From: Macrostomum lignano
Taxonomy: Eukaryota
DNA length: 64,000 nt
Reading direction: 5' to 3'
Assembly: GCA_002269645.1 (NCBI GenBank)
Contig: NIVC01001665.1
Span: forward strand, 124,001-188,000
Positions 1 through 62,443 of this stretch are shown in pieces. The position numbers and the translations under genes were made by a program. Position 1 is the stretch's first letter; each line of letters starts with the position of its first letter. Below the pieces are notes generated by a model. It was not told the DNA's origin, searched no databases, and worked only from the letters and a program-made list of their open reading frames with translations.

Positions 1-214
1 GTGCCGTGCAGATAAGCAGAAAATTATTTGCATGGCATATGTAGAAGATAGGGCAGCTATCTCGTCAGTGTGCCGTGCGGATAAGCAGAAAATTATTCGC
101 ACGGCATATGTAGAAGATAGGGCAGCTATCTCGTCAGTGTGCCGTGCGGATAAGCAGAAAATTATTCGCACGGTACCGTTGGAATAAGACAGAAATTATT
201 CCTACGGTACCGTG
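1..214. repeat. 69-bp tandem repeat (about 2.5 copies, cut by the window edge) with strong internal hairpins, followed by a related 19-bp-stem hairpin
   Basis: GTGCCGTGC recurs at 1, 70 and 139. Each unit has a 15-bp stem GTGCCGTGCGGATAA/TTATTCGCACGGCAT and a 6-bp stem AGATAG/CTATCT. At 169-214, CACGGTACCGTTGGAATAA pairs with TTATTCCTACGGTACCGTG (1 mismatch). Confidence 0.85.
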
Positions 215-1186
215 GGGATAAGCACTGCCTAATATTTTTTCAGCCTTTGATGATTCTTCTTTAAAGATAGAAATAAAATAAATGAACTCAGGAAATTCAG
301 ATGCATTAATTGAAACATTAAATAAAGAAAATAGGCACATGAACAATTTAAATATCAACGAATATACAGTTTCTGTCTTTCTTTGTCTAGACTGAGTGTC
401 TAAAATGAAATTATATGAAATCCTTGAGCTTAAGATTCACGTTTTATGGAAAGTATGAAACTAAATAAGCGCGAAATATTTATCACGCATGAGTGAATTT
501 ATTAATTAATATATTTTAGTATGTTAAAATATAAATTTTTATTTTTATTTTTAAAATTACAAAAATAACTAATTTCTAAACGTCTAAACAGTTTAGTTTA
601 GTTTTAACTGTCAAAAATTCAAAAATGATATTTTCTGCGAATGAAAAACCATGAACAATGTCAAAACGCTACCCAAAACAAGGAAAAAGCACAAGCACAA
701 AGCACATGGCATGGCATGGCATGACAATCTTCGATTTTGACCAGGGGCAGACCAAGAAATTGTTTGAGAGAATCGCCAAATTATATCGAGCAAGTTACAA
801 CCCAATTTTAGAAAATAGACCTTGCATAGTTAATTACAGACAGTTACAGGCTAAATGTACAGCCCAATTTTTTGCCACGGCCACACCGCCACGGGCCACG
901 GCTGAAGGGCCTTTCCTCCCTCCCTAAGGCCTTCAGGGACATATGATTTTCATATCAGTCTAGCCATTATCTGAGTTTGACTATAGCTAGGCTAGGCCTA
1001 GCCAGGCCAGGCCCTACCACTACCACGTTTATGGCCTAGGGCCTATTATTGATGTTTGATTGAATTGGATGAAGAAATTAGGCCTAAGCAAACAAATTAA
1101 TATATAGTGTTAATGTCATAAGACTTGCAAGTTGCAGTCTTAGGGCATGCTTAGGTAGGCCTATATACCCTTATCAATGATAATAG

Positions 1187-1779
1187 GGCTATAGCCCAGG
1201 TTGCGGATGGTATGCATGTACGCCGGAAAAGTTCCGGCGTACAAAACGGCCACCCTAAGTCCTTGGCGTACACAATCGGCGTACACAAACCCTGGCGCAC
1301 TTAGTTGGCGTACACTATTGGTGTACACAAGTAATACAGCCACGTATACTTTTTTGGCATACAAATTTTGGTGAATAAATTCATGCCGTGCATGAGAATT
1401 GTAATGTAAATTAATGTTTTTACGTAAAGTAAAGGAAAATTTCTATCGTCAGTGATAAACATTTTGCTTCTTTTAAGTTAAAATAAATAAAATTAGTGTA
1501 AAATTTTGCTGGAAGTATTAATTTTGCATGATATTTTTTGTAGTTATAATTTAAGTTTGTTTAAATTGAAAATATTCGTAATATTTTAAAAACACTTTTC
1601 ATGCGAAAGCCTTTCTTAGAAAACTCTACTCGTGAAAACCGAATGACCTTTTTTTAGGAATTTTTGGTGTACATTTTAGTGCAACTTTTTGTTTTTGGCG
1701 TACACTGGCGTACAAAGTCCTTGATGCCCAAATTTTTTCCGGCGTACACGGGTACATGATCCGCACACTGGGCTATAGC
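1187..1779. mobile_element. Non-autonomous DNA transposon (MITE) with ~45-bp imperfect TIRs and subterminal GGCGTACAC repeats
   Basis: Left end GGCTATAGCCCAGGTTGCGGAT...TGTACGCCGGAAAA; right end TTTTCCGGCGTACAC...ATCCGCACACTGGGCTATAGCC. About 10 GG(C/T)GTACA motifs cluster near both ends around an AT-rich core. The palindrome GGCTATAGCC on both sides could be TSD or TIR; superfamily unresolved. Confidence 0.75.
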
Positions 1780-3129
1780 CTAGCCTATGCTATGCCCTAT
1801 ATATGTTTGGTTATTGGCTACAAAGCTAAGTATATACATAACTGAAGTATTCAACAAGAAAACTTTGTTTTTTATAATAATTTATTTATAAAAATGTTAT
1901 GACCCTACATATTGTATATATATAATATAATTTATTTTTATCTAATTTTGTAAATACAAAATTCCTTGTTATACATTTAACTGGTTTAACTAGGCCTAGG
2001 GTGAGGGCCCTAGGCTAGATATTATAAATGCCTTTAACTTTTATAATTATTGAATGTAGTAAAAATTAAAAAGAATAGTTATTAAATATTAAACATTAGA
2101 AAACTGTTTAAACTATATTCAACTTTTTTCTAGGCATATGCTTAGTTAGAGACAAGCAAAATAGATAGATTATAGCCAACTTGCATATTAAATTATTTGT
2201 ATATATAGCCAGCACAATGCATAGGACAATTAGCGGTGGCCATGCCAACCACAGCATGTGTGCCATGCTACTTGCTAGACCATATATATTTTATTTTTAA
2301 TAGCAATACTTATAACATCTCTTTAGAACTAATTACTAATTCCTTTTGAATAGGTCTTGTATTTAAGCCTAATCACAATGACGCCTAATCAGAAAGATGA
2401 AAAAAGAGAGAAGTGAGCCTCTATCCTAAGGTGCTAATTTTATAATGATAGTAAACAATATGATTGAGTTATATTGGCAATATTTTGAATTTGGTCATTT
2501 TTTGTCAAGGCAAATAGAATAAAGTTTTTTTTACAAGTTCATATCAATATCTAAAGGAAATAATACCAGGGTGGAAAAATCAATAAGGAGAAAAAGAAAT
2601 AAGAGCACAAGTGTATAAAACAATATATATGAAAAGTCAATATGTACAATATGATAAGTCATAAACTCTAAGAAATATAGATTGATAGCTAAAAGTAGAG
2701 TACAATAGTATATATGTCTAGAGAAAGAAAAAAGAAATAAAAGTTGGCAAAGCAAAGTAAATATATTTAAGAATGATAGGTAATAGATCAACATAGAAAA
2801 ATAAACAAATAAAAACTATATTGTGAATTTATGGCTAGAACAATACAAATAGGCCTAAAAACCTTTAAATGTCAAATAAAAATTTTGAACAAGAATATCA
2901 CTAGAAATAAAAAAGTTTAATAATAAAAAATGAATATTGTGTAGAAAGGGTTCTATTGCATGGCATCATAGTCAACAATCTGTACAAACAAATATATACT
3001 ATAGCAGAAGAGCAGAAAAAATCATGGACTAAAAAGAGCAAAAATTATTATTTGCATCAAAAACTGCATTAGTTGATTGGCAGGTTCAAGCTGACTATAG
3101 GTAGGCAGCATTGGGGCCTTGTAGTATCA

Positions 3130-5200
3130 TGCTAGCCAGTCTCTCACCATGGCAACTAGGGCATTGGATGCTGCACAATGGGGCAAAATCAGCAGGATGG
3201 CCAGATTGTTGGTGCCATGCAGGGCATTGATCAGCTTGACTTCATGGTTCTAATGCTGTTCATTAGCTTCTGGTCCTAAGCTATCCCAAGCCTACATGCT
3301 GGTGACAGTGAAACCTGTCAGCCTGAGGCTATCACTAGTAAAGTGGCGGGCTACTGCAGTGTTTTGGGCATGTCAGATGTCGCCAATGTGCACCAGCATG
3401 CGTCCAAAGATGCTGTTGGTCAGTCCTGCCAACATAGACCATGTGATTTCACCAGTGGCAGAACATGGCGTAGATGGAATTCATTTCGTTGCAGTCGATC
3501 CTCTAACTGATGATGAGTTGGACCAATATGGCAGCTGATCTGGGGCAGATGGAGCTGAACCTGGCATGTGCTGGGCCAGGTTGCACAGCAGGAAGCCAAA
3601 CTCCCACCCTCTGGTCGGGTAGAAGCCTAGTTCAGTCAACATGTATTTGATGGACGTGCAGAATAAATGCCAGCTGTAGTCTTGGTGCTGCACCAGATTC
3701 AACATCAGCCTGGATAGACGCTGCGTCGAATTCGGCCATCCGGGAGCACCGCCAGGCGTACCTGAGGAGCCTGGGACTTCACCACGCCCCGGAAAGTTTG
3801 CTTAGGATGGAAAAAGTTGTGGTGGATGAGGGGCTCACCTGTGTGTACTCGTATGTGTGTAACCATTGCTCAGTTCAGGTCAGAAAATTGAGTCGCTAAG
3901 GCAGAGAAAGTTAGTGTCCTCCACCAAATGCCGCCAGAGGTCTACTTCCAGGATGGTTGGATTGGCTAGGCATTGGAACAGATGTCTAGAATCATGCGGG
4001 GAGGACCCGCAGTCCGGACAACTGTCCTGGATCACGGCCTCCAGACGATGCCGGTAGCTATTCAGGAGTAGTGAGTAGCCGCTGCTCAGCATAAGACGAC
4101 GAGGGGGGGGAGGGCAGCTCAACACAGATGTTGAGGGCTCGGCTGTCTCGTTGGGCTTGAAGAACACCATGGTTCCCAGGCTCTTGTTGTCGCCCTCGCG
4201 GTCCCAGAAGACGGTGGTGTCCAGGAAGTAGACTTCGGTGCTGCTGTAGCTTAATTGTACTCGTAGCCGAATGTTTGGGTCGAGGGTGTCCAGATGTTGG
4301 TGAAACCGAACCAGCTCCGCCTCTGTTCCCCGTTACTCTTCAAAGACGTCGTCAATGTAGCGGAGCCACAGACGGCTTCTGTGGTCTGGTCCCCAGGCCT
4401 CTCTGCTCTGCTCCCAGTAGCCCATGTAACCTTCCGTCGAACTCTAAGTCGTTGTGCTCCAGGGTCAGCTTGAGCAGGCTGGCATCGGCTGTCCGGGCGC
4501 TCCCTAAAAGCCCTTCGCACGCACTCGAGACCGGCCATCGTCGGGATGTTGGTGTACAGGCTGACGCGTCCATGGTGAACAAGAAGGCCTCCTCGGGCGC
4601 CGGACAGGTGATCCCGTGGATGGCGGCCTGGAAGTGGTCCGTATCCCTGATGAAGCTGGGCAGCTTGATGACGATCGGCTGCAGGAAGCTGTCAATGAAT
4701 CGGCCGCTGGCGTAGGACTCGCTGTCCACGTCAGACACAATGGGCCGACCCGGAGGAATGTCGCCGAGCGGCCAAGACTCGACAGGCTTGTGGGGATCTT
4801 CGGCAAAAAGTAGAAGTACCGCATGCGGAACTCGCTCTTCGGGCTAAATGCATTATACTGGCGACGATCAATAATTCCAGCTGCGACTTAAAAACGCAGC
4901 GGATCATCTGAGCTGTGAAGCAGTTGATCGGCGCGTTCATGGGCCGATAGAACAGCGGGTCCTCCAGCTGACGCAGGCACTCAAGAACATAGTCTTGCCC
5001 GGTTCAGAATGACCAGCTGGCTGCCCTTGTCGGCCGGCTTGATGAGGATGGGCTTGTCCGCCCGTAGGTCCCGCAGGGCCTTCGCCTCCGCCTCGCTGAT
5101 GTTTGGAGCTTTCCTGCAGTCTTTGATGCCGTCTCGAATGACGTCAAGCTCTTGCAGCATCGCTTAAGGCTCGGGCCTGAGATGACTCTGTTCGATGTTG
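3130..5200 (-). mobile_element. Degraded Penelope-like retroelement (RT + C-terminal GIY-YIG endonuclease), frameshifted and 5'-truncated
   Basis: PLE motifs occur in order on the minus strand: KPADKG (~5015-5040), RYFYFLPKI, PGRPIVSD, LPSFIRDTDHF...FTMD, YIDDVF, FLDTTV...FFKP, HPKQTFRGVVKSQ-LLRY, then IYAMFC (3464-3475) ... YVGRT (3428-3436) and AVARHF. Multiple stops and frameshifts. Left boundary approximate. Confidence 0.9.
3837..4131 (-). mobile_element. 3' fragment of a non-LTR retrotransposon (LINE C-terminal CCHC knuckle) nested in the PLE
   Basis: LSSGYSLLLNSYRHRL...CPDCGSSPHDSRHLFQC...LW matches LINE ORF2 C-termini. It is flanked by near-identical direct repeats TGAGGGGCTC (3827-3836) and TGAGGGCTC (4132-4140). 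Removing it rejoins the PLE motif KPNETA-EPLIHHNFFHPKQTF. Confidence 0.75.
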
Positions 5201-5609
5201 GTTGATATGCCAATCAATGTTGAAAAGCATTCAAGCTTTCTTTCCTATTATTCTTGCTTGCTACTCAATAGTATAAGTACCCAACTTTGTGTGACTTATG
5301 GACTAAGCTTTGTCATCAAGTAGTTATTATGTGTAAGTTTCACTAGTCTTGACTGCAAGAGAATTTCAAATAAAAAGACAACTGCACAATTAAAAAATAA
5401 GTCAAGCTAAAATTCTAATTATTATATCTATCACTTTCATTAAGCTATACTTACCGTAAAAACAAAACCATTTTGAAGGTAGAAATTTAATTATGAATAA
5501 CTTTTACAACTACTCTACTTGTAGTAAAAATGTTGGCAAAAATAGTTTAAATCTTTACAAGCAGTAAAAATGTTAGGCTTTTAACTTAGTCAACAACACA
5601 ACATTCCAG

Positions 5610-5894
5610 CCTCAAGGCAAGATCAAAGTGAAGGCCAAGCTGCCCGCTCAGGAGGCGAGGCGCCGCCAAACTCCGACAGGTAAAAAGACCAGCGAACGCG
5701 AGAAAACTCGCAAAGGTCGAGTCGACAAGGCGCCAAAACGAGCTGGCGCCGTTGCTTCCCAGTCGAGTGCGCGCGATGTGCAGCGCGCTTTCGATCGAAT
5801 GATTGCCAAGAAGGTTGAAGAGGAATGCCGGGCCAAGGCCAAGAGCCAGACTGGCTACGAGTCCAAGCTGGATCAGGGGCAGAGCAACTCTTAA
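5610..5894 (+). CDS. C19orf53: Small basic protein, C19orf53 / Leydig-cell-tumour 10 kDa / UPF0390 (DUF2462)-like; initiator Met not encoded locally
   Basis: PQGKIKVKAKLP...KTRKGRVDKAPKR...RAFDRMIAKKVEEECRAKA resembles the family pattern M(A/P)QG..K......RKG...IAPKK...I.KKIE (recalled, not searched). It starts right after acceptor TTCCAG (5604-5609); in-frame TAG at 5574-5576. Confidence 0.65.
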   Translation, partial: PQGKIKVKAKLPAQEARRRQTPTGKKTSEREKTRKGRVDKAPKRAGAVASQSSARDVQRAFDRMIAKKVEEECRAKAKSQTGYESKLDQGQSNS

Positions 5895-6064
5895 AGCTGG
5901 TGGAGCTTTGGAGCTACTGTGTTTGGTTGCTATGGTAGCAGCCAAACAGCCCACTGAACCCCTTGTAAATTTATGAAAAATATAAAATGTCCTGGAGTTC
6001 TGCGTTCTGGCGCTTTGGTGTACCATTAATTTCTTCTTTGATATTATTTTACAATTTAATTTTC

Positions 6065-6815
6065 CTCAGTTGCTGGCCAGCCTCCCAGATCCTCTGTTGC
6101 TGGGCCAGCCTCCCAGATCCTCAGTTGTTAAGTCAGCCTCCCAGATCCTCAGTTGCTGGGCCAGCCTCCCAGATCCTCAGTTGCTGGGCCAGCCTCCCAG
6201 AGTGTCAGTTTCTGGGCCAGCTTCCCAGAGTGTCAGTTTCTGGGCCAGCCTCCCAGAGTGTTAGTTGCTGGGGCAGCCTCCCAGAGTGTCAGTAGCTGGG
6301 ACAGCCTCCCAGAGTGTCAGTTTGCCGGGCCAGCCTCCCAGAGGGTTAGTTTCTGAATTCTGGGACAGTCTCCCAGATCCTCCGTTGCTGGGCCCGCCTC
6401 CTAGATCCTCAGTTGCTGGGTATCACAGATCCTCAAATGCTGGGTATCACAGATCCTCAATTGCTAGGCCTCTCAGATCCTCAATTGCCAGGCCTCCCAG
6501 ATCCTCAATTGCTAGGCCTCCCAGATCCTCAATCGCTGGGCCACCCAGATCCTCAATTGCGAGGCCTCCCAGATCCTCAATTGCGAGGCCTCCCAGATCC
6601 TCAATTGCTAGGCCTCCCAGATCCTCAATTGCGAGGCCTCCCAGATCCTCAATTGCGAGGCCTCCCAGATCCTCAATTGCTAGGCCTCCCAGATTCTCAA
6701 TTGCGAGGCCTCCCAGATCCTCAATTGCTAGGCCTCCCAGATTCTCAATTGCGAGGCCTCCCAGATCCTCAATTGCTAGGTCTCTTAGATCCTCAATCGC
6801 TGGGTCACCCAGCAC
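6065..6815. repeat. Minisatellite whose unit shifts from 28 bp (CAGTTGCTGGGCCAGCCTCCCAGATCCT) to 24 bp (CAATTGCGAGGCCTCCCAGATCCT)
   Basis: Period 28 measured at 6184/6212; period 24 at 6551/6575. The 24-bp part produces the spurious repetitive ORFs in the track. Confidence 0.95.
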
Positions 6816-6928
6816 CAGCCTAAAACTGTCCTAGTTCCTATAAAGCACATTCAAACGCCAAGTTTTAGCTATAACAAAGCATTGCTCCCAACAGAAATTA
6901 CAGACTTGCTCTTAATTAAAAATTTCAG

Positions 6929-9900
6929 TCATCAAGTTCGTCAGCACCAGAGCGGCAGCGACCGCTGTGTCCCCACGAAGCCGATTGCCCGGAAACCGGG
7001 CTGCTGCACTTTGCAGATTTCATTCATCCCGATGAAGACAAAGATTTAAACAATAGTCAGGTGCAAATGGAAGCTATTAGTAGCGATGCCTATCACCATG
7101 GCAACAGTGATGAGGAAGCTACTAGCCAAGATGACGAAGCGGGAGATGCTGGAAAGAAACCATCATTGCAGAGACAAGACACCCTGCCAGTTAATGAGAA
7201 TGGGATTTCTGAATCTAAACGGCAAAAGTTGGATAACTCAGTAGGTTTGCCTTCTTCTGAACCGGACAATGATAAGGTATTTAGTTTGAACCTTGCTACC
7301 ATTAGTAGTTTTTTTGCTCATTAAAGTTACTAATCGCACATGAAAATAGATGATTAGCCATGAGGTCTTTAATACTTCGTGTGCAAATTTCTTATTGCAA
7401 AATACCGGGACACCACACCATAATCTAGTTCTCTACTAACAGTAAAAATATAAGGAAATACGTTTAACAGTATGTAAAGCTAATAAAATCATGTTCGGGG
7501 CGCTTACACCACAAGACCTAAACATCACATGACCGAAATATCACCTGACTGAAACATCACATGACCGAAACATTACATGACCGAAACATCACATGACCGA
7601 AATATCACCTGACTGAAACATCACATGACCGAAACATTACATGACCGAAACATCACATGACCGAAATATCACCTGACTGAAACATCACATGACCGAAACA
7701 TTACATGACCGAAACATCACATGACCGAAATATCACCTGACTGAAACATCACATGACCGAAACATTACATGACCGAAACATCACATGACCGAAATATCAC
7801 ATGACCGAAACATTACATGACCGAAAAATCACATGACCGAAACATTACATGACCGAAACATCACATGACCGAAATATCACATGATCAAAACATCACATGG
7901 CTGAAACATCATAAGACGAAAGCATCACATGACCGAAGCATCACATCACCGAAACATCACATGACCGAAACATCACATGACCGAAGCATCACTTCACCGA
8001 AACATCACATGACCGAAACATCACATCACCGAAACATCACATGACCGAAACATCACATGACCGAAACATCACATGACCGAAACATCACATGACCGAAACA
8101 TCACATAATCAAAACATCACATGACCGAAATATCACCTGACCAAAACATCACATGGCTGAAACATCATAAGACGAAAGCATCACATGACCGAAGCATCAC
8201 ATGACCGAAACATCACATGACCGAAACATCACATGACCGAAACATCACATGACCGAAACATCACATGATCAAAACATCACATGACCGAAACATCACATGA
8301 CCGAAACATCACATGACCGAAACATCACATGATCAAAACATCACATGACCGAAATATCACCTGACCAAAACATCACATGGCTGAAACATCATAAGACGAA
8401 AACATCACATGACCCAAACATCACATGACCCAAACATCACATGACCCAAACATCACATGACCCAAACATCACATGACCCAAACATCACATGACCCAAACA
8501 TCACATGACCCAAACATCACATGACCCAAACATCACATGACCGAAACATCACATGACCGAACCATCGCATGAATACATGTAAGGCATCACATGACCGAAA
8601 CATCACATGACCGAAACATCACATGACCGAAACATCACATGACCGAAACATCACATGACCGAAACATCACATGACCGAAACATCACATGACCGAAACATC
8701 ACATGACCGAACCATCGCATGAATACATGTAAAGCATCACATGACTGAAACATCTCAACAAAAACTCAAAATGTCACCCCAGCAACCGCACGCTCTCTCC
8801 CGCGGCCTGTCGCTCATGCGCCAGTACAGCGCCATGTCTCACGCCGAGCGCAAAGCCCTGGTAGCCGAGGCCCTGGCCGCTCGTCGAAGCCTCGAGCTTC
8901 GCTTGGCCCGAGCCGAATCTCGAGAGCGTCGCTTATCAAGCGTTGGCTGCGTCGGGCTGCCCGTCCTGCCTGGAGAGCTGGAAGCCATTCGAGACCATCG
9001 ATACCTGACCGTGTCGCTTGATTCATCCGACTCGACTCGATGGAATTGCGGCTCACCGGAGGAGTCTCATTATCGACTGGCTGAGTCGCAGTTTCATCGG
9101 CTGTTAGCCAGGGACTGCGTTGGATGGTTAGCGGCCTTGATTGATGCCGGAATTCTGTCTCACTGCTCACTGATTTTTCTGCTTAGGCTTGTTGATGAGA
9201 TTATTGTCTGTCTTTGTCCGCTTGTACCGATTCTTCTGGTTTTGATGGCGTTCTCAAACTTCTTTAACTTCTATTCCCCTTTCTGGCTGCCTCTCTCTGA
9301 CTCCACCTCTGATTCTCCCTTGCTGACTCTCCCTTTGACTCTCTCCATCTCTGACTCTCCCTCTGAATCTCTCCCTCTCTGACTCTCCCTCTCTGGCTCT
9401 CTCTCTGATGTCGCTCTAGCTCTCTCCCTCTCTGACTCTCTCCCTCTTACTCCCTAGCTCTCTCTCTGACTCCCACCTGACTGTCGCTCTTTCTCTCCCA
9501 CTCTCTGACTCTCTCCCTCTCTGACTTTCCCTCTGACTCTCCCTCTGATTCTCTCCCTCTTACTCCCTGGCGCTCTCTCTGACGTCGCTCTTGCTCTCTC
9601 CCTCTCTGACTCTCTCCCTCTCTGACTCTCTCTGACTCTCTCCCTCTCTGACTCTCTCTGACTCTCTCCCTCTCTGACTCTCTCTGACTCTCTCCCTCTC
9701 TGACTCTCTCCCTCTCTGACTCTCTCCCTCTTACTCCCTGGCTCTCTCTTTGACTCCCACCTGACTGTCGCTCTTGTTCTCTCCCTCTCTAGCCCTCTTT
9801 CTGTTACTCTCTTGCCTTCTCTGGCTTTTTACTAACTCCCTTACTCCCTCTCCCCTTCATTCCACATATGTAAAGCGATCGTAGCTTAAAACTTGAAACC

Positions 9901-11717
9901 TCCCCTCACCTCAGCTTCCAGGTAGCCAGAGTTGAGTACATCATCAATCCCGAACTTCTAACCGGATTTCGTCAATTTCAACAAGACCTGTTGAACAAAG
10001 ACGACTCTGGCAATGACAAAGACAGCCAGAAAACTGTGCTGGCATTCCACGGCACAGACGAATCCAATATCGAGTCCATCTGTCGTCAGGGATTTCATAA
10101 TCCTAATAATTACAGCGCCGAATACCGACAGGCCAACGATTCCGGCTGGTACGGCCGGGGCGTGTACTTTAGCGAGTACCCGGCTTGCGCTATGGACTAT
10201 GTGAAAGGCCGGAGCAGACTACTGCTGTGTCTGGTTAGTAGTGCCTTATTCTTGCTTGCTTGCTATCTTTATTGAGTGACAACACTAAAATTAAGAAGCA
10301 GTTAAATATACAAGCTCGTATCTGAAATAAGTGATTAGTTGGCGCTATTAGATGATTAGTTGACGCCATTAGGTGGTTAGGTGTCGCCATTAGGTGATTA
10401 GTTGACGCCATTAGGTGGTTAGGTGTCGCCATTAGGTGATTAGTTGACGCCATTAGGTGGTTAGGTGTCGCCATTAGGTGATTAGTTGACGCAATTAGGT
10501 GGTTAGGTGTCGCCATTAGGTGATTAGTTGACGCAATTAGGTGGTTAGGTGTCGCCATTAGGTGATTAGTTGACGCCATTAGGTGGTTAGGTGTCGCCAT
10601 TAGGTGATTAGTTGACGCCATTAGGTGGTTAGGTGTCGCCATTAGGTGATTAGTTGACGCCATTAGGTGGTTAGGTGTCGCCATTAGGTGATTAGTTGAC
10701 GCCATTAGGTGGTTAGGTGTCGCCATTAGGTGATTAGTTGACGCCATTAGATGATTAGTTGATGCCATTAGGTGGTTAGCTGTCGCCATTATGTGATTAG
10801 TTGACGCCATTAGGTGGTTAGTTGACGCCATTAGGTGGTTAGGTGTCGCCATTAGGTGATTAGTTGACGCCATTAGGTGGTTAGGTGTCGCCATTAGGTG
10901 ATTAGTTGACGCCATTAGGTGGTTAAGTGTCGCCATTAGGTGATTAGTTGACACCATTAGGTGGTTAGGTGTCGCCATTAGGTGATTAGTTGACACCATT
11001 AGGTGGTTAGGTGTCGCTAGCGTGATTAGTTGACGCCATTAGATGATTAGTTGATGCAATTGGGTGATTAGCTTCGGCATTAGTTGAGTATAATTACCTG
11101 GAATAATAGCCTTACTAACAATACATGTAATTATCTGGTAGTTTAGCCATAAACTAAGCTCCCTTCTCTCCGCACAGGTCAGCCCGGGTCGCACCTACCA
11201 GTGCCGGCACTACTCCCATGGCCAGCCCTGCCAACCAGGCTATCATTCGCATCGTAGCCCCGACGGACGCGAACTCGTGACCTTCGACGCGCGTCAATCT
11301 CTGCCAGTTTATGTTGTTCATTACGAACGTTCCGCTCCTGATAAATCTACTGCTGCTGCTACTGCGGACAAGCCTAGCGGTCCGTTCGATAGTTTGCACG
11401 AATTGTATTTTAATGTCAATACAGAATCGAATACAAGCTGCCGAATTCTGGCCAATAGGAGAGTTCGAATATTAATTGACGGATTTAACAGTCCCGGATT
11501 GTTGCTGACTACTGATCAGCTGATTCGATTCTGCCTGGCTGAGGGCGCAGTTTCTGCCGAATCTTTTGGTCAGGGCGATATTAAGACTGTTACTAACGAC
11601 TGTTTGGTTATTGTTCTTGACGAGTCTAGAATTTCCGGTGTTATTAACGAAGTCGACGGTGTTGAAGTAGCGACTGTCGAGCAAGTCTTTAAGGATGCTT
11701 TAGATTCCGTTGCTTAA
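6929..11717 (+). CDS. PBZ zinc finger + PARP catalytic domain (H-Y-E) + possible BRCT-like C-terminus; 4 exons
   Basis: Join 6929-7276, 8783-9126, 9915-10233, 11178-11717 (GT-AG, phases 0/2/0; exon 2/3 junction could alternatively be 9118/9922). PBZ spacing C-x5-C-x6-H-x5-H (RPLCPHEADCPETGLLHFADFIH, 6959-7027). PARP motifs: VEYIINP, FHGT (His 10048), GWYGRGVYFSE (Tyr 10165), LLLCLVSPG, GYHSH...RELVTF (Glu 11271), LPVYVVHY. Stop at 11715-11717. Confidence 0.88.
7521..8755. repeat. 16-bp minisatellite (CATCACATGACCGAAA) in PARP-gene intron 1, with a local 64-bp higher-order repeat
   Basis: Period 16 (8041/8057). Variant TATCACCTGACT recurs at 7539, 7603, 7667 and 7731. Confidence 0.97.
9285..9860. 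repeat. CT-rich low-complexity repeat (CTCTCTGACTCTCTCC-like) in PARP-gene intron 2
   Basis: Direct inspection; pyrimidine-rich with recurrent CTGACTCT. Confidence 0.9.
10330..11065. repeat. 21-bp/42-bp dimeric minisatellite in PARP-gene intron 3
   Basis: TTAGGTGATTAGTTGACGCCA alternates with TTAGGTGGTTAGGTGTCGCCA. Confidence 0.97.
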
Positions 11718-12693
11718 GAACTCAATAAGTAACAAGCTAGATGACACAGGTAACTCTGCCTTGACTGTAGTTTTTAACAAGTTATATTTGATCATTTTTT
11801 GTTTTACTCAGCTTGCAGTAGTACATCGACACCATGTGTATATATTTTCTACACTTCCTTAACTTTCACACGACTTACTTACTAAAAAAATATTACACGT
11901 AGCTTCAGAAAACGTGTCTTTATGATCCCGTAAAAATAGAATATAGGATTTTCAGCCGTACATGTACATGTAATAGACACGCTTGTTATTTTTAATGCCG
12001 CCTTTGGTCCACTCCGAGCCAAAACGAGAATGCGCATTTTCTCTTCTTTGTGCCTACGGCATTAGCTATTAAATGTGATATTTTACGTTGCTTTTATTCA
12101 CTAATTGTTTTTAAAATCAGTTATGCTTCGTTTTAATACGAGTGTATCGATCGCAAGCGCTTCAGTAGGCCACCGTCTAGAGCCGTAAATGCATTATTTT
12201 TATATTGATTTTTTGTCTCGATAAATAAATTTTAGAACGCTGTTCCTTGACGCGATTTGGGCAGTTTTATCGGAAAATAAAAAATCGACTAACCACTTGT
12301 AATTGTTGTGTATAAACTTGTGTCCGGTTATTTTAAGAAATTTTAGAATTTACACTTTGAAATGTGGATTTGTCGTGTGACCATTTTATAGATTCAACAG
12401 TAGAAGCCTCAGTTTTAAAAAGCGTAATTTTTAAATCAAACCTGCATGCGAGATATCCGAGTAGATTTGATTTAGCTACAGTCAAAGTTCAAATTGTACG
12501 AGTACATGTATTGTACAGTGTATAAATGATGTAGATAAATTTTCACAACAGCTTGTATACAAAATAAGTTGAACTTATGTAGATGTATATAACATATGAA
12601 ATATGGTAAATACTTTGCTAAACATTGATTAGGAGTTTGGACCATCAGTCTGATAGCCATCATAACTAGCTTTTTTAAACTAAATTTTTCTCT

Positions 12694-12953
12694 GGGCCTT
12701 TTCATATTACCAATTCCAGAACCAGAATCGGTTCGGAATTCCAAGAAAAACAGCAGTATAACTATTAAACTCTGTTAATATTTGACTGCCTTAACAACCT
12801 AACTTAGCACAATTTTTCACTTTCTTCTTGGCGATTGCCATTCAATAATAAAAACTTTATAGCACGTATTTCCCTCTAGTTATGGAGACAAAAAGTTATA
12901 CTTCACAAATTGGTTCTGGTTCTGGAACCAGAGCAAGCAATATGAAAAGGCCC
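12694..12953. mobile_element. 260-bp MITE, PIF/Harbinger-like
   Basis: Perfect 15-bp TIR GGGCCTTTTCATATT / AATATGAAAAGGCCC, plus inner inverted TTCCAGAACCAGAA. A 3-bp TCT flanks both ends (putative TSD; Harbinger TSDs are usually TWA). Confidence 0.7.
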
Positions 12954-14414
12954 TCTTAGAGTGGGTCAAATTAAAATAAGTCACGTATTTTCTATATGCC
13001 TAAGAAAACGTAGCGATGAAATACGTGTAAGTTACTAGCTTTGGTTCATTTGTTTAACGCACATAACGCGTTTTGTTGAGATAAGTTATTTTTCTTTGCT
13101 TTAATGGAATCAAAAACTTTTCTTGGATTTACGTCGTTTAATACGTGATTATAGCACGGTAGATACGACGCACACATCTGGCAGCGATTCAACATGGACT
13201 TTAAAAGATCTTTTAAATTCAGCATTTTGTATTTTCGATTCTATAGTTTCATCTGCATCCAGATTCCAGAATCAATGGAATACGTATACGTTCCATCCCA
13301 CGATATGAAATAAAAACTCAAGAGCTATTTTTCGTGTCAATTTTAGTTATATAATAAAACCGCTTTTTCAAATCGAAATAGTAATATTTCTTAAGAATTT
13401 TTGACTGCAAGCTACACGTACGAGCGTATATTTGGTGTAATTTAAATTTCTTAAACATGCAACAAACAAATAGTTTGTGATTTGTGGGTCAGACCTATCT
13501 TTTAAAATATATAGAAACAAGTTCTTTCATAAGATACAACACTATGACGTTTTGTACTTGTAGAAAATATTTTTAATCGCGTGAGTTGGCCAGTTAAGAA
13601 ATATGTAAATTCTACTCTATGTAAATTAAGAAGTGATTTTTATTCCAGTTATATTTCATTCTGCCTTAAGATTTTCTTCAATGTGTTTAACATGGAAGTT
13701 TTAGAATTTATGAGAATTTAAGGTTTTAATTTTAGGATAGGAAGCATCAGAGATTTTAAAAACAATAAAATAAAATTTAAATCATCAGAGATTTAAAATT
13801 TTGTCATCTTTTCAGCATAAATTATGATTAAACAATATTTTTTATATTCTTTTTTAGGCATGGTAGCATAATAACTTAATAAAAACGAATCATTCCTCAG
13901 TAAATGTTTTTTAAAGTGGCTTAAATTTTAAATTGAAATGCTTTCCTTGGCTTTGTATTTAATTTTAACATTGATCATTTTTTTCAAATATAACGGCCGT
14001 GCTCTAACACAAAAATTTAACCAAACAAGCTTTATTAATAATAAATTTATAAAGGCATTTGCGGATTTGTCTTGATTTCGATTTCGTTAATTTTTTACTG
14101 CTGAATGTATAACCGTCGCTATTACATTCGTACTTCTAAACTAAACAACATAACAGTGTTAACTTGAATAATTCTTCTTCTGGCAAATTGTACTGTTGGA
14201 ATTGCATAGATAAACATCCGAACATTAAATTTTTTAACATAAATCCTAACAAAAAGCGTTGATCGCTATTATACGTGCACGCACTTGCTGTGTGTCTTGC
14301 ATAACATGTACATGTATCTATAAAACACACAATATACAACATTGTGCACAGATGTGGCAGATACTTCCTAATGGATGCAACTGACATCATACGAGCGTGA
14401 ATCACGTATTGGCC

Positions 14415-15430
14415 ACCCTCTTCCCCTCTAACTCTCATCCCCTCACACCCTCATCCCCTCACACCCTCATCCCCTCACACACTCACACCCTCTTCCCCTC
14501 TCACCCGCTTCCCCTCTGCACCTTCTTCCCCCTCACCCTCTCCACCCTCACCCTCTCCATCCTTACCCCTCTTTCACGTCACCCTCTTCCCGTCACCCTA
14601 TTCCCCCTCACCCGCTTCCCCTCGCCCTCTTCCCCCGTCACCCTCTTCTCCCTCACCCTCTTCCCCGTCACCTCTTTCCCGTCCTTGTCCTTGTCCTTGT
14701 CCTTGTATGGCCAGTCGACCTCCTAAGAGGCGTGCCACTCATTGGTTTTGAGCGGGTTCCGCGGTGCAGACTTTTCGGTGTCTTGCGATATCTGTTTTTG
14801 AGATGCTCTTGTTGCATCCTGGGCAAACAATCTTGGCTCTTCTCGGTACGTCGGCTGGTTCAGGTCTGTCCGTTGTGGCGGCGTCTTGGCTATTTTCCTC
14901 TTGTTCGTACCCTGTTTGTAGGTCATTGTACAGCGCGCAGGTGCGCTATGTGCCTCGCATGTTACTGGCGCTCCTGGGCTGGAGACAGTACGGGCAAGTC
15001 CCTTTCTGTGCCTTTGCAGATCTCCAGGTGGTTCGTCTCGCTGCCTCTTTCCCGTCACCCTCTTTCCCATCACCCTCTTCCCCGTCACCCTCTTCCCCGT
15101 CACCCTCTTCCCCGTCACCCTCTTCCTCGTCACCCTCTTCCCCGTCACCCTCTTCCCCGTCACCCTCTTCCCCGTCACCCTCTTCCTCGTCACCCTCTTC
15201 CCCGGCACCCTCTTCCCCGTCACCCTCTTCCTCGTCACCCTCTTCCCCGTCACCCTCTTCCCCGTCACCCTCTTCCCCGTCACCCTCTTCCCCGTCACCC
15301 TCTTCCCCGTCACCCTCTTCCTCGTCACCCTCTTCCTCGTCACCCTCTTCCCCGTCACCCTCTTCCTCGTCACCCTCTTCCCCGTCACCCTCTTCCCCAT
15401 CACCCTCTTTCCCGTCACCCTCTTCCTCCT
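14415..15430. repeat. 15-bp C-rich minisatellite (CACCCTCTTCCCCGT) split by a LINE insertion
   Basis: Degenerate copies at 14415-14682 and regular copies at 15044-15430. Source of the PRHPL/SPS/EEGDG ORFs. Confidence 0.93.
14683..15043 (-). mobile_element. 5'-truncated LINE 3' end (RTE-like) with C2HC zinc knuckles and an (ACAAGG)4 tail
   Basis: Minus-strand CPYCLQPRSASNM...C and CPGCNKSISKTDIARHRKVC, stop, short 3' UTR, then (ACAAGG)4. A 12-bp TSD CCTCTTTCCCGT lies at 14671-14682 and 15044-15055. Confidence 0.8.
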
Positions 15431-16078
15431 CAAAAATCACCTCTTGCCCCTAACCCTATTCCTCTCTCGCCTTTCTTTCACCCTCTTCCCCCCCACCCTC
15501 TTACCAGATCACTCTCTCAATATGGGTCATTGAGCCCTCCATCTTGAAAATTTCGGCCCAATAAAGAGCCAGCACGCATCATTTTCATGCGCATACAAAC
15601 GTACTTGTGAGACTGCCACTGTCATTTCCTGTTATGGCACCTAAACTGTTCTTTAAGCTTCTAACTGTCCGTCCAGAAGCATCCAGGAGATCAAGATATG
15701 AGATTCTGCATTTTAAATCGAGGTGGGAGGGGTTACATAGCTCACGGGATAAGAGAGTGTCTTCCGCTAGTCACCAATTCTCCGAGCTCAAAACTTAAAC
15801 AATGTGAAATTCTGAGTTTGCTCATCTTCGAGGTTGGGAAGCTTTCGAGTTTGTGAATCCTTGAGGTTGTAAATCCTCGAGTTTCTGAAAGCTGTGCTAC
15901 TTAGTAACTGTCATTTTTCTGCACATTGCATGTACTTTCCTTACTACTCATAAGTAGGCGATCACTTACTAAAATATACGACAGTCGAATTGTTTCAGAA
16001 CCTATGAAAACAGCTAACAAAAACCGCCCCGAAAGTACATGAACAAAGTCAAAGCCAGACTGTAGAGACGTCTCTTAG

Positions 16079-62443
<46,365 letters not shown>

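What the first reader, a model, noticed from the sequence alone, without database searches (positions are those of the whole stretch)
5610..7276. Second ATG-less gene 1 kb downstream: possible SL-resolved operon (C19orf53-like + PBZ-PARP)
The PARP gene's first exon also begins at an acceptor (AATTTCAG, 6921-6928) in phase 0, with an in-frame TAA at 6917-6919. Its first in-frame ATG (7067) lies after the PBZ finger, so the finger can only be translated if a Met is spliced on, and an SL AUG would give MSSSSSAPERQR. Two same-strand genes 1,034 nt apart sharing this signature suggests a dicistronic unit resolved by trans-splicing, with a minisatellite in the intercistronic spacer.
Basis: inference. 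Interest (0 to 1): 0.7.

Follow-up and report, generated by a model that had tools for sequence, protein, structure and literature searches.

The report
Trans-spliced flatworm gene pair
Two neighbouring genes of the flatworm Macrostomum lignano have no start codon of their own, most likely because the ATG comes from the spliced leader RNA, which is a known habit of this species; whether they are transcribed together as an operon is plausible but untested.

Summary
The window is Macrostomum lignano Mlig_3_7, contig NIVC01001665.1, bases 124001-188000.

M. lignano has a single 35-nt spliced leader (SL) that ends in ATG, and about 30% of its genes are trans-spliced.

- **Upstream gene (5610-5897, DUF2462/C19orf53 family):** SL trans-splicing is effectively shown. 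Pfam aligns it from profile position 2, or from position 1 once a Met is added. In two paralogous contigs the acceptor CAG reads ATG. The neighbouring DHH-family gene shows a graded CAG / CATG / GCATG series. I read these as polishing scars from SL-junction RNA-seq reads, because the assembly was Pilon-polished with RNA-seq.
- **PARP gene (exon 1 at 6929-7276):** an SL-donated Met is inferred, not shown. The acceptor is conserved, family homology starts at the acceptor, the spacer holds no consensus donor or ATG exon, and database models are 5'-partial.
- **Operon:** the pair meets the published operational definition, with 285 nt of unique spacer. Co-transcription is untested. The "shared signature" argument is weak because the divergently oriented DHH gene carries the same signature.
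- **Minisatellite:** unremarkable, since 36% of the window is tandem repeat.

This is a known kind of feature and of low interest.

The parts
5604..5609 (+). Trans-splice acceptor TTCCAG of the upstream gene
   Evidence: It fits the published motif [T/C]TNCAG. In the paralogous contigs L001 and L002 the same six bases read TTCATG, which I interpret as an SL-suffix polishing scar.
5610..5897 (+). Single-exon CDS of a DUF2462/UPF0390 (C19orf53-like) protein: 94 codons plus TAA, with no Met of its own
   Evidence: Pfam PF09495 scores 24.3 bits over profile positions 2-67 without Met, and 29.1 bits over positions 1-67 with Met. The same Met-less 94-aa product, starting at this exact base, is on record on three contigs. 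The protein is identical in all three copies, with 2 synonymous differences in L002.
5898..6062 (+). Unique spacer part 1: presumed 3'UTR of the upstream gene, with the PAS-like sequence AATATAAA at 5979-5986
   Evidence: No AATAAA occurs in the spacer. AATATA lies at 5979 and TATAAA at 5981. The poly(A) site itself is unknown, so this is an inference.
6063..6812 (.). Minisatellite with 24-28-nt units, about 27 copies
   Evidence: TRF. It is present in all three copies with lengths of 746, 800 and 406 nt.
6813..6928 (+). Unique spacer part 2 (outron end): TATAAA at 6839-6844, ATTAAA at 6915-6920, in-frame TAA at 6917-6919, acceptor TTTCAG at 6923-6928
   Evidence: The acceptor and the TAA are conserved in L001 and L002.
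6929..7276 (+). PARP gene exon 1, with a PBZ-type finger at 6959-7030 and no ATG before the finger
   Evidence: Translation. tblastn of homologue N-termini aligns from 6929-6962. UniRef model A0A1I8JK75 starts with SSSSS, exactly at 6929. PF10283 scores 18.8 bits on the paralogue version of the finger.
8783..9126 (+). PARP exon 2
   Evidence: Exact spliced reconstruction of PAA65313.1 (P0002) on the window.
9915..10233 (+). PARP exon 3, the first part of the catalytic domain
   Evidence: Pfam PF00644 hit.
11178..11717 (+). PARP exon 4, including the stop codon

Best explanation
Both genes are ordinary SL trans-spliced genes of Macrostomum lignano.

**Mechanism.** The 35-nt spliced leader (CGGTCTCTTACTGCGAAGACTCAATTTATTGCATG) is joined to the acceptor at 5609/5610 and, by inference, at 6928/6929. 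Its 3'-terminal AUG then lies in frame and serves as the initiator codon. This gives M-PQGKIKV... for the DUF2462/C19orf53-like protein and M-SSSSSAPERQRPLC... for the single-finger PBZ-PARP.

**Likely arrangement.** The two genes sit in tandem, separated by about 285 nt of unique sequence plus a length-variable minisatellite. They are probably transcribed as one dicistronic precursor from a promoter upstream of 5610, then resolved by 3'-end formation of the first gene and SL trans-splicing of the second.

**What is shown and what is inferred.**
- Shown: the organism, the SL sequence, the anatomy, and a trace of SL-junction reads at the first gene.
- Inferred: SL use at 6929.
- Untested: co-transcription.
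For: **Organism and SL.**
- The window is 100% identical to NIVC01001665.1 of GCA_002269645.1.
- The SL sequence ending in ATG, the 30% trans-spliced genes and the acceptor motif [T/C]TNCAG come from PMC8629364.
- All reported flatworm SLs end in ATG, which can serve as a start codon (Cheng et al. 2006, as cited in PMC12582326).

**Upstream gene.**
- The DUF2462 profile aligns from position 2 without Met and from position 1 with Met, and the score rises from 24.3 to 29.1 bits.
- The models on record on three contigs start at exactly the base after the acceptor.
- The acceptor CAG reads ATG in L001 and L002.
- The neighbouring DHH gene shows CAG, CATG and GCATG in its three copies. These are progressive copies of the SL 3' end.
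- The assembly was Pilon-polished with RNA-seq reads. The scars therefore report SL-junction reads.

**PARP gene.**
- TTTCAG and the in-frame TAA are conserved in all three copies.
- Family homology begins at 6929-6962, and the window holds no second finger or N-terminal exon.
- There is no GT[AG]AG donor in 5898-6928, and no phase-0 ATG exon ends at one; five such exons end only at weak GT[AG] donors.
- GenBank models g1 and g4 are flagged 'partial', and the UniRef model starts exactly at 6929.
- The finger matches a Logan-assembled homologue (P0006, unnamed, source organism not identified) at 17 of 24 residues. Between L001 and L002 it has 3 synonymous and 0 non-synonymous changes.

**Operon.**
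- The genes are adjacent on the same strand.
- The unique spacer is 285-288 nt in all three copies, against the published threshold of 1 kb and mode of about 100 bp for repeat-adjusted distance.
- Adjacency is kept in all three copies.
Against: - No SL-junction read, poly(A) read, TSS signal or precursor transcript could be examined for this locus.
- The PARP acceptor carries no polishing scar in any of the three copies.
- The GenBank PARP models begin 33 nt (window) and 6 nt (L001) inside exon 1, not exactly at the acceptor. By contrast, the two neighbouring genes' models start exactly at the junction. This suggests few or no SL reads at this site in the 2017 data, or low expression.
- A TATAAA at 6839-6844, about 85 nt upstream of the acceptor and conserved in all three copies, could be an independent core promoter.
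- The ATG-less signature is also present in the divergent DHH gene, so it says nothing about operon membership.
- In the window copy the conserved Gly of the finger is Glu.
Confidence: 0.5

Rival explanations
1. Both genes receive their Met from the SL, but they are separate transcription units. The PARP gene would have its own promoter in or just after the minisatellite, for example the TATAAA at 6839-6844. That would produce a short outron which is then trans-spliced.
For: - By the published distance criterion only about 40% of trans-spliced genes fall in operons, so most are not.
- TATAAA lies about 85 nt upstream of the acceptor and is conserved in all three copies.
- The divergent DHH gene shows that the ATG-less signature occurs outside operons.
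Against: - The 285 nt of unique spacer falls in the short mode of trans-spliced-to-trans-spliced distances, which the authors assign to operons.
- TATAAA is equally readable as a poly(A)-signal variant.
- The 116 nt between the repeat and the acceptor is little room for a promoter.
Confidence: 0.3
2. The PARP gene is not SL trans-spliced at 6929. Either an unannotated cis exon supplies the Met, or transcription starts near the acceptor and translation begins at the internal ATG at 7067, giving a finger-less protein as in UniRef model A0A1I8I9Y9.
For: - The GenBank models start 6-33 nt inside the exon rather than at the acceptor.
- None of the three copies has a polishing scar.
- In parasitic flatworms, acceptors are often shared between cis- and trans-splicing.
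- Homologues carry 45-105 more N-terminal residues, including a first PBZ finger.
Against: - There is no consensus donor in the spacer, and no phase-0 ATG exon ending at one.
- No other PBZ-like motif or N-terminal homology occurs anywhere in the window.
- The finger is conserved to the family's second finger and shows synonymous-only change between L001 and L002, so it is almost certainly translated.
- No database model includes an upstream exon.
Confidence: 0.12
3. The window copy is a decaying redundant copy. The CAG at 5607-5609 would be a real start-codon loss (ATG in the two paralogues), and the Gly-to-Glu change would damage the finger. On this reading, the acceptor-like look is coincidental.
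For: - L001 and L002 read ATG where the window reads CAG.
- The window copy has a derived Glu at the conserved finger Gly.
- M. lignano DV1 is a hidden polyploid with redundant copies.
Against: - The DHH control shows the same kind of difference as a graded CAG / CATG / GCATG series that matches the SL 3' end. In its 120 nt of flanking sequence there is only one other difference.
- The assembly was polished with RNA-seq.
- The models on record start exactly after the 'ATG' on the contigs that carry it, as expected from cuts at SL peaks.
- The CDS of the window copy is identical to that of L001.
Confidence: 0.05

Closest known systems
Flatworm SL 3'-terminal AUG used as the initiator methionine (Cheng, Cohen, Ndegwa and Davis 2006, J Biol Chem; cited in PMC12582326)
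   Same: The SL ends in AUG. The acceptor lies in phase 0 directly before codon 2 of a conserved protein. The gene has no ATG of its own.
   Different: That work was done in Schistosoma mansoni. Here the species is the free-living M. lignano, and use of the SL AUG is inferred from sequence, not from translation assays.
M. lignano operons with repeat-expanded intergenic regions (Ustyantsev and Berezikov 2021, PMC8629364)
   Same: Adjacent genes on the same strand, a downstream gene that starts at an SL-type acceptor, repeats filling most of the spacer, and a repeat-adjusted distance well under 1 kb.
   Different: Membership is operational only. I could not see whether the authors' annotation flags the PARP gene as trans-spliced, or whether the pair lies in one transcriptional unit.
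C. elegans operons (SL2-type, about 100-nt intercistronic regions)
   Same: In both, a polycistronic precursor is resolved by 3'-end formation plus SL trans-splicing. The typical spacing is about 100 nt once repeats are removed.
   Different: M. lignano has a single SL with no SL2-like specialisation. Its SL carries an AUG; from my own knowledge, the nematode SLs do not end in AUG.
Invertebrate PBZ-PARP(-BRCT) proteins, e.g. Pecten maximus LOC117343249 and Actinia tenebrosa LOC116302161
   Same: About 30-37% identity in the best local alignment, which covers 60-100% of the query. They share the ...LHFAxFxHP finger, a coiled middle region and a PARP catalytic domain with the HFRLAESQF and VLAFHGT motifs.
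   Different: Most homologues have two PBZ fingers and 45-105 residues before the second one. The M. lignano protein keeps only the second finger, 13 residues from its N-terminus, and has no BRCT hit.

Membership tests
SL trans-spliced mRNA with SL-donated initiator AUG (flatworm type) | The organism has an SL whose 3' end is AUG | tested here: met
   The window is M. lignano Mlig_3_7. The SL is CGGTCTCTTACTGCGAAGACTCAATTTATTGCATG (PMC8629364).
SL trans-spliced mRNA with SL-donated initiator AUG (flatworm type) | A 3' splice acceptor at the start of the first exon, with no matching cis donor upstream | tested here: met
   TTCCAG (5604-5609) and TTTCAG (6923-6928) both fit [T/C]TNCAG. There is no GT[AG]AG in 5898-6928. 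The only one in 4800-5609 (at 5333) would put the ATG just before it out of frame with the exon (by hand; one search lists the site).
SL trans-spliced mRNA with SL-donated initiator AUG (flatworm type) | ORF in phase with the SL AUG, with no in-frame ATG before conserved protein sequence | tested here: met
   Upstream gene: the first residue aligns to DUF2462 profile position 2. PARP: an in-frame TAA lies 4 codons upstream, and the first in-frame ATG (7067) lies after the finger.
SL trans-spliced mRNA with SL-donated initiator AUG (flatworm type) | SL-exon junction seen in RNA at the upstream gene (5610) | tested here: met
   The evidence is indirect. SL-suffix polishing scars (CAG to ATG) sit at the homologous site in L001 and L002, with a graded control at the DHH gene. 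The models on record start exactly at the junction on three contigs.
SL trans-spliced mRNA with SL-donated initiator AUG (flatworm type) | SL-exon junction seen in RNA at the PARP gene (6929) | tested here: inconclusive
   There is no scar in any copy. One UniRef model starts exactly at 6929, but the GenBank models start 6 and 33 nt further in.
M. lignano operon (operational definition of PMC8629364) | Immediately adjacent genes on the same strand, with no opposite-strand gene between them | tested here: met
   Called genes on L001-L006.
M. lignano operon (operational definition of PMC8629364) | Repeat-adjusted intergenic distance below 1 kb | tested here: met
   From stop codon to acceptor is 1,031 nt. 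Subtracting the 746-nt minisatellite leaves 285 nt, and the other copies give 287 and 288 nt.
M. lignano operon (operational definition of PMC8629364) | The downstream gene is SL trans-spliced | tested here: inconclusive
   See the PARP junction row above.
Operon in the strict sense | A single polycistronic precursor transcript, with no TSS between the genes | not testable with these tools
   No RNA-seq, RAMPAGE or T-fill data could be queried.
DUF2462 / UPF0390 (C19orf53, L10K) | Pfam PF09495 score above the gathering threshold of 23 bits | tested here: met
   24.3 bits, or 29.1 bits with Met. However, phmmer against 1.8 billion representatives found only the query itself, and there was no PDB match.
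PBZ-containing PARP | PARP catalytic domain (PF00644) | tested here: met
   44.9 bits against a cut-off of 26.7.
PBZ-containing PARP | PBZ finger (PF10283; C-x5-C-x6-H-x5-H) | tested here: inconclusive
   The spacing pattern is present. PF10283 scores 18.8 bits, below the 22.7 cut-off, on the paralogue (Gly) version, and gives no hit on the window (Glu) version. The finger aligns to the second finger of homologues that do carry PF10283.

The most novel reading that the evidence does not exclude
The CAG/ATG (upstream gene) and CAG/CATG/GCATG (DHH gene) differences between homeologous copies could be real rather than polishing scars. Copies of one gene would then switch between a genome-encoded initiator ATG and an SL-donated one, for example via ATG to AAG to CAG, or by conversion from SL-bearing cDNA. 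That would be a living example of how SL-AUG dependence arises and reverts.
Probability: 0.04. Interest if true: 0.65.

Novelty: new member of a known kind. Interest (0 to 1): 0.2.

Why it matters
Biologically this is routine for M. lignano, but it has three practical consequences.

1. **Annotation.** GenBank CDSs flagged "partial" here are probably complete proteins once the SL Met is added. Examples are BOX15_Mlig020716g1 and the 94-aa Met-less product.
2. **Transgene design.** If the pair is an operon, the PARP gene has no promoter of its own. A reporter for it would need the region upstream of 5610.
3. **Assembly quality.** The SL-suffix scars mean that some "genomic ATGs" and missing AG acceptors at trans-splice sites in Mlig_3_7 are artefacts of polishing with RNA-seq. 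This could bias acceptor-motif statistics and start-codon calls in this widely used assembly. The published motif was found at only 9,551 of 21,754 sites; a link between that figure and the scars is my speculation.

Tried and rejected
- **Rfam scan of the window and search for the SL 3' 16-mer.** There is no SL RNA gene or other known RNA here.
- **Protein searches with the upstream gene and a PDB search.** They returned only the query itself or nothing, so family assignment rests on Pfam alone.
- **Transcript-derived (Logan) proteins carrying the SL Met.** None are in the database for either gene.
- **Supplement and full-text searches for C19orf53, L10K, PARP and Mlig020716.** There was no per-gene record of trans-splicing or operon status.
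- **Start coordinates of the PARP models on record as evidence for the SL site.** Rejected, because those starts lie 6 and 33 nt inside the exon.
- **Cis-spliced fusion of the two genes.** The only GTAAA-type donor inside the upstream CDS (5680) is in phase 1. Joining it to 6929 would run into a stop codon. I worked this out by hand.
- **An upstream exon encoding the family's first PBZ finger.** None exists in the window.
- **The bacterial promoter/terminator scan.** It is irrelevant for a eukaryote.
- **Pfam on the reverse-transcriptase-like ORF fragments at 4250-5170.** No hit.
- **The ninein-like gene as a further scar test.** It starts with a genomic ATG in all copies, so it is uninformative.
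Full report
**Identity of the window.** A look-up of the 94-aa product of 5610-5894 returned three contigs of GCA_002269645.1, the Macrostomum lignano Mlig_3_7 assembly. BLAST shows that window 1-15894 is 100% identical to L003 4392-20285. The window is therefore NIVC01001665.1, bases 124001-188000. L001 (NIVC01003629.1) and L002 (NIVC01000189.1) are paralogous or homeologous copies, roughly 90-99% identical depending on the segment, with the same gene order: a DHH/DHHA2 gene on the minus strand, then the 94-aa gene, then the PARP gene on the plus strand.

**The observation.** All stated coordinates are correct.
- The acceptor AATTTCAG lies at 6921-6928, and the exon starts at 6929 in phase 0.
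- An in-frame TAA lies at 6917-6919.
- The first in-frame ATG is at 7067, downstream of the C-x5-C-x6-H-x5-H finger (6959-7030).
- The upstream gene begins at 5610, directly after TTCCAG, and stops at 5895-5897.
- The minisatellite spans 6063-6812.

An exact spliced reconstruction of GenBank protein PAA65313.1 gives PARP exons at 6929-7276, 8783-9126, 9915-10233 and 11178-11717.

**Background from the literature.**
- M. lignano has one 35-nt SL, CGGTCTCTTACTGCGAAGACTCAATTTATTGCATG.
- About 30% of genes are trans-spliced, and the acceptor motif is [T/C]TNCAG.
- About 15% of genes are assigned to operons. The definition is adjacent same-strand genes whose repeat-adjusted distance is under 1 kb, with a mode near 100 bp. 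The authors note explicitly that repeats inflate intergenic distances within operons (PMC8629364).
- About 7% of assembled transcriptional units are precursors with several trans-splice sites (PMC5730564).
- All reported flatworm SLs end in ATG, which can serve as a start codon (Cheng et al. 2006, cited in PMC12582326).

Both acceptors in the finding fit the published motif.

**Upstream gene.** Pfam DUF2462 (PF09495; from my own knowledge this is the UPF0390/C19orf53 family) matches at 24.3 bits from profile position 2. With a Met prefixed, the match starts at position 1 and the score rises to 29.1 bits. Exactly one residue, the Met, is therefore missing from the genome.

In L001 and L002 the six bases before the exon read TTCATG instead of TTCCAG, within a 600-nt flank that is otherwise 97-99% identical. 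That could mean the paralogues have a real ATG. The DHH gene supplies a control. Immediately before the first base of its Met-less 405-aa model, the three copies read:
- ttttttCAG in L001,
- tttttCATG in L003,
- ttttGCATG in L002.

In the 120 nt shown around that junction, only one other position differs. This is a graded replacement of the acceptor by the 3' end of the SL.

The Methods of the genome paper state that the Canu assembly was polished with Pilon using Illumina shotgun data and RNA-seq data. I therefore read these differences as polishing scars left by SL-junction RNA reads. This is an inference, but chance is implausible: three to four clustered changes, each to the SL base, against a 1-3% background divergence. 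The scars are fossil evidence that SL-exon junction reads exist at the upstream gene and at the DHH gene. They also explain why the models on record start at exactly the base after the "ATG" on the contigs that carry it.

**PARP gene.** The evidence here is indirect. In favour:
- The acceptor and the upstream in-frame TAA are conserved in all three copies.
- tblastn of ten homologue N-termini aligns only to 6929-7160, and the window contains no second PBZ-like motif.
- The spacer contains no GT[AG]AG donor at all, and no ATG exon ends in phase 0 at a consensus donor.
- GenBank models g1 and g4 are flagged "partial". UniRef A0A1I8JK75, from an older assembly's annotation, begins SSSSSAPERQ, exactly at 6929.
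- The finger aligns with the second PBZ finger of a PBZ-PARP(-BRCT) family found in molluscs, cnidarians, an annelid, rotifers and amphioxus.
- It matches RPVCEHGVDCSETDLIHFADFWHP of homologue P0006 (a Logan assembly, organism not named) at 17 of 24 residues.
- Between L001 and L002 the finger shows 3 synonymous and 0 non-synonymous changes.
- The finger is thus very probably translated, which requires an upstream Met. The SL is the only candidate source found.

Against:
- None of the three copies carries a scar.
- The GenBank models start 33 nt (window) and 6 nt (L001) inside the exon. This suggests that no sharp SL peak was available for this gene.
- PF10283 reaches only 18.8 bits, below the 22.7 cut-off, and only on the paralogue version. 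The window copy has Glu in place of the conserved Gly.

**Operon question.** The distance from stop codon to acceptor is 1,031 nt in the window, 1,087 nt in L001 and 694 nt in L002. The unique part is 285-288 nt in all three, so only the minisatellite varies. Subtracting a plausible 3'UTR of about 100-160 nt puts the pair in the short-distance mode that the published analysis assigns to operons.

Co-transcription itself could not be tested. A conserved TATAAA at 6839-6844 could be a core promoter or a poly(A)-signal variant, and an ATTAAA lies 8 nt before the acceptor. The minisatellite is unremarkable: 36% of the window is tandem repeat, and 53% of random 1,031-nt intervals touch an array of at least 300 nt.

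**Verdict.**
- An SL-donated Met is effectively shown for the upstream gene.
- My subjective estimate for an SL-donated Met at the PARP gene is about 0.8.
- My subjective estimate for a dicistronic operon is about 0.5. It fits the published operational definition but remains untested.

The phenomenon is already described for this species and phylum, so novelty and interest are low. The most useful by-product is the evidence that RNA-seq polishing left SL-suffix scars at trans-splice acceptors in Mlig_3_7.

Noticed in passing
L001 9995-10000 and L002 9995-10000 (the site homologous to window 5604-5609); L002 5041-5045; L003 2896-2899: At trans-splice sites the acceptor is replaced by the 3' end of the spliced leader in some paralogous contigs. 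The upstream gene shows CAG to ATG; the DHH gene shows CAG, CATG and GCATG. Mlig_3_7 was Pilon-polished with RNA-seq, so these look like assembly artefacts that create false genomic ATGs and erase AG acceptors.
   Followed up: partly
L001 411-4636 (-), L002 2659-5040 (-), L003 6-2895 (-); just upstream of the window start: The DHH/DHHA2-domain gene is also ATG-less. Its model starts with ALQAYLSQ... directly after TTTCAG in L001, and I read an in-frame TAA five codons upstream by hand. It is a third SL-Met gene in this neighbourhood, and it is transcribed divergently from the pair.
   Followed up: partly
window 6977-6979: The window copy has Glu (GAA) at the conserved Gly of the PBZ finger (CPHEADC, against CPHGADC in both paralogues and C.xG..C in the family). 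It could be a damaging substitution in a redundant copy, or a sequence error.
   Followed up: partly
window 39946-51224: An 11.3-kb array of a 47-nt unit: 240 copies at 98% match, with strong GC skew. Overall, 36% of the window is tandem repeat, spread over 28 arrays.
   Followed up: no
window 7506-8722, 9276-9747, 10331-11071: Each of the three PARP introns holds its own tandem-repeat array: a 16-nt unit, a CT-rich array of roughly 14-42-nt units, and a 42-nt unit.
   Followed up: no
window 4250-5170 (-): Frameshifted ORF fragments carry motifs that, from memory, resemble a retroelement reverse transcriptase (KPADKG, YFLPKI, GRPIVS, SLYTNIP, YIDD). They are present in all three copies and lie between the DHH gene and the upstream gene. 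Pfam found nothing.
   Followed up: partly
window 6915-6920: ATTAAA lies 8 nt upstream of the PARP acceptor AG. If it were the upstream gene's poly(A) signal, 3'-end formation and trans-splicing would be almost contiguous, and the minisatellite would sit in a roughly 1-kb 3'UTR.
   Followed up: no
window 8771-8785: An ATG at 8771 within intron 1 reads in frame through the exon-2 acceptor (MSPQ|QPHALS...). An internal start could therefore produce a finger-less PARP isoform. Database models P0038 and P0040 also start further downstream.
   Followed up: no
window 20445 onward, and about 28000-36000: A ninein-like gene (EF-hand and Ninein_mid domains; 2,695-3,117 aa in the paralogues) starts with a genomic ATG at 20445, just after an (ACAG)n microsatellite at 20000-20398. 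No gene is called for it in the part of the window copy that L004 covers (to about window 21700). Further downstream, a unit encoding ...[32 protein letters not shown]... recurs about every 700-1,400 nt; whether it belongs to this gene was not checked.
   Followed up: no
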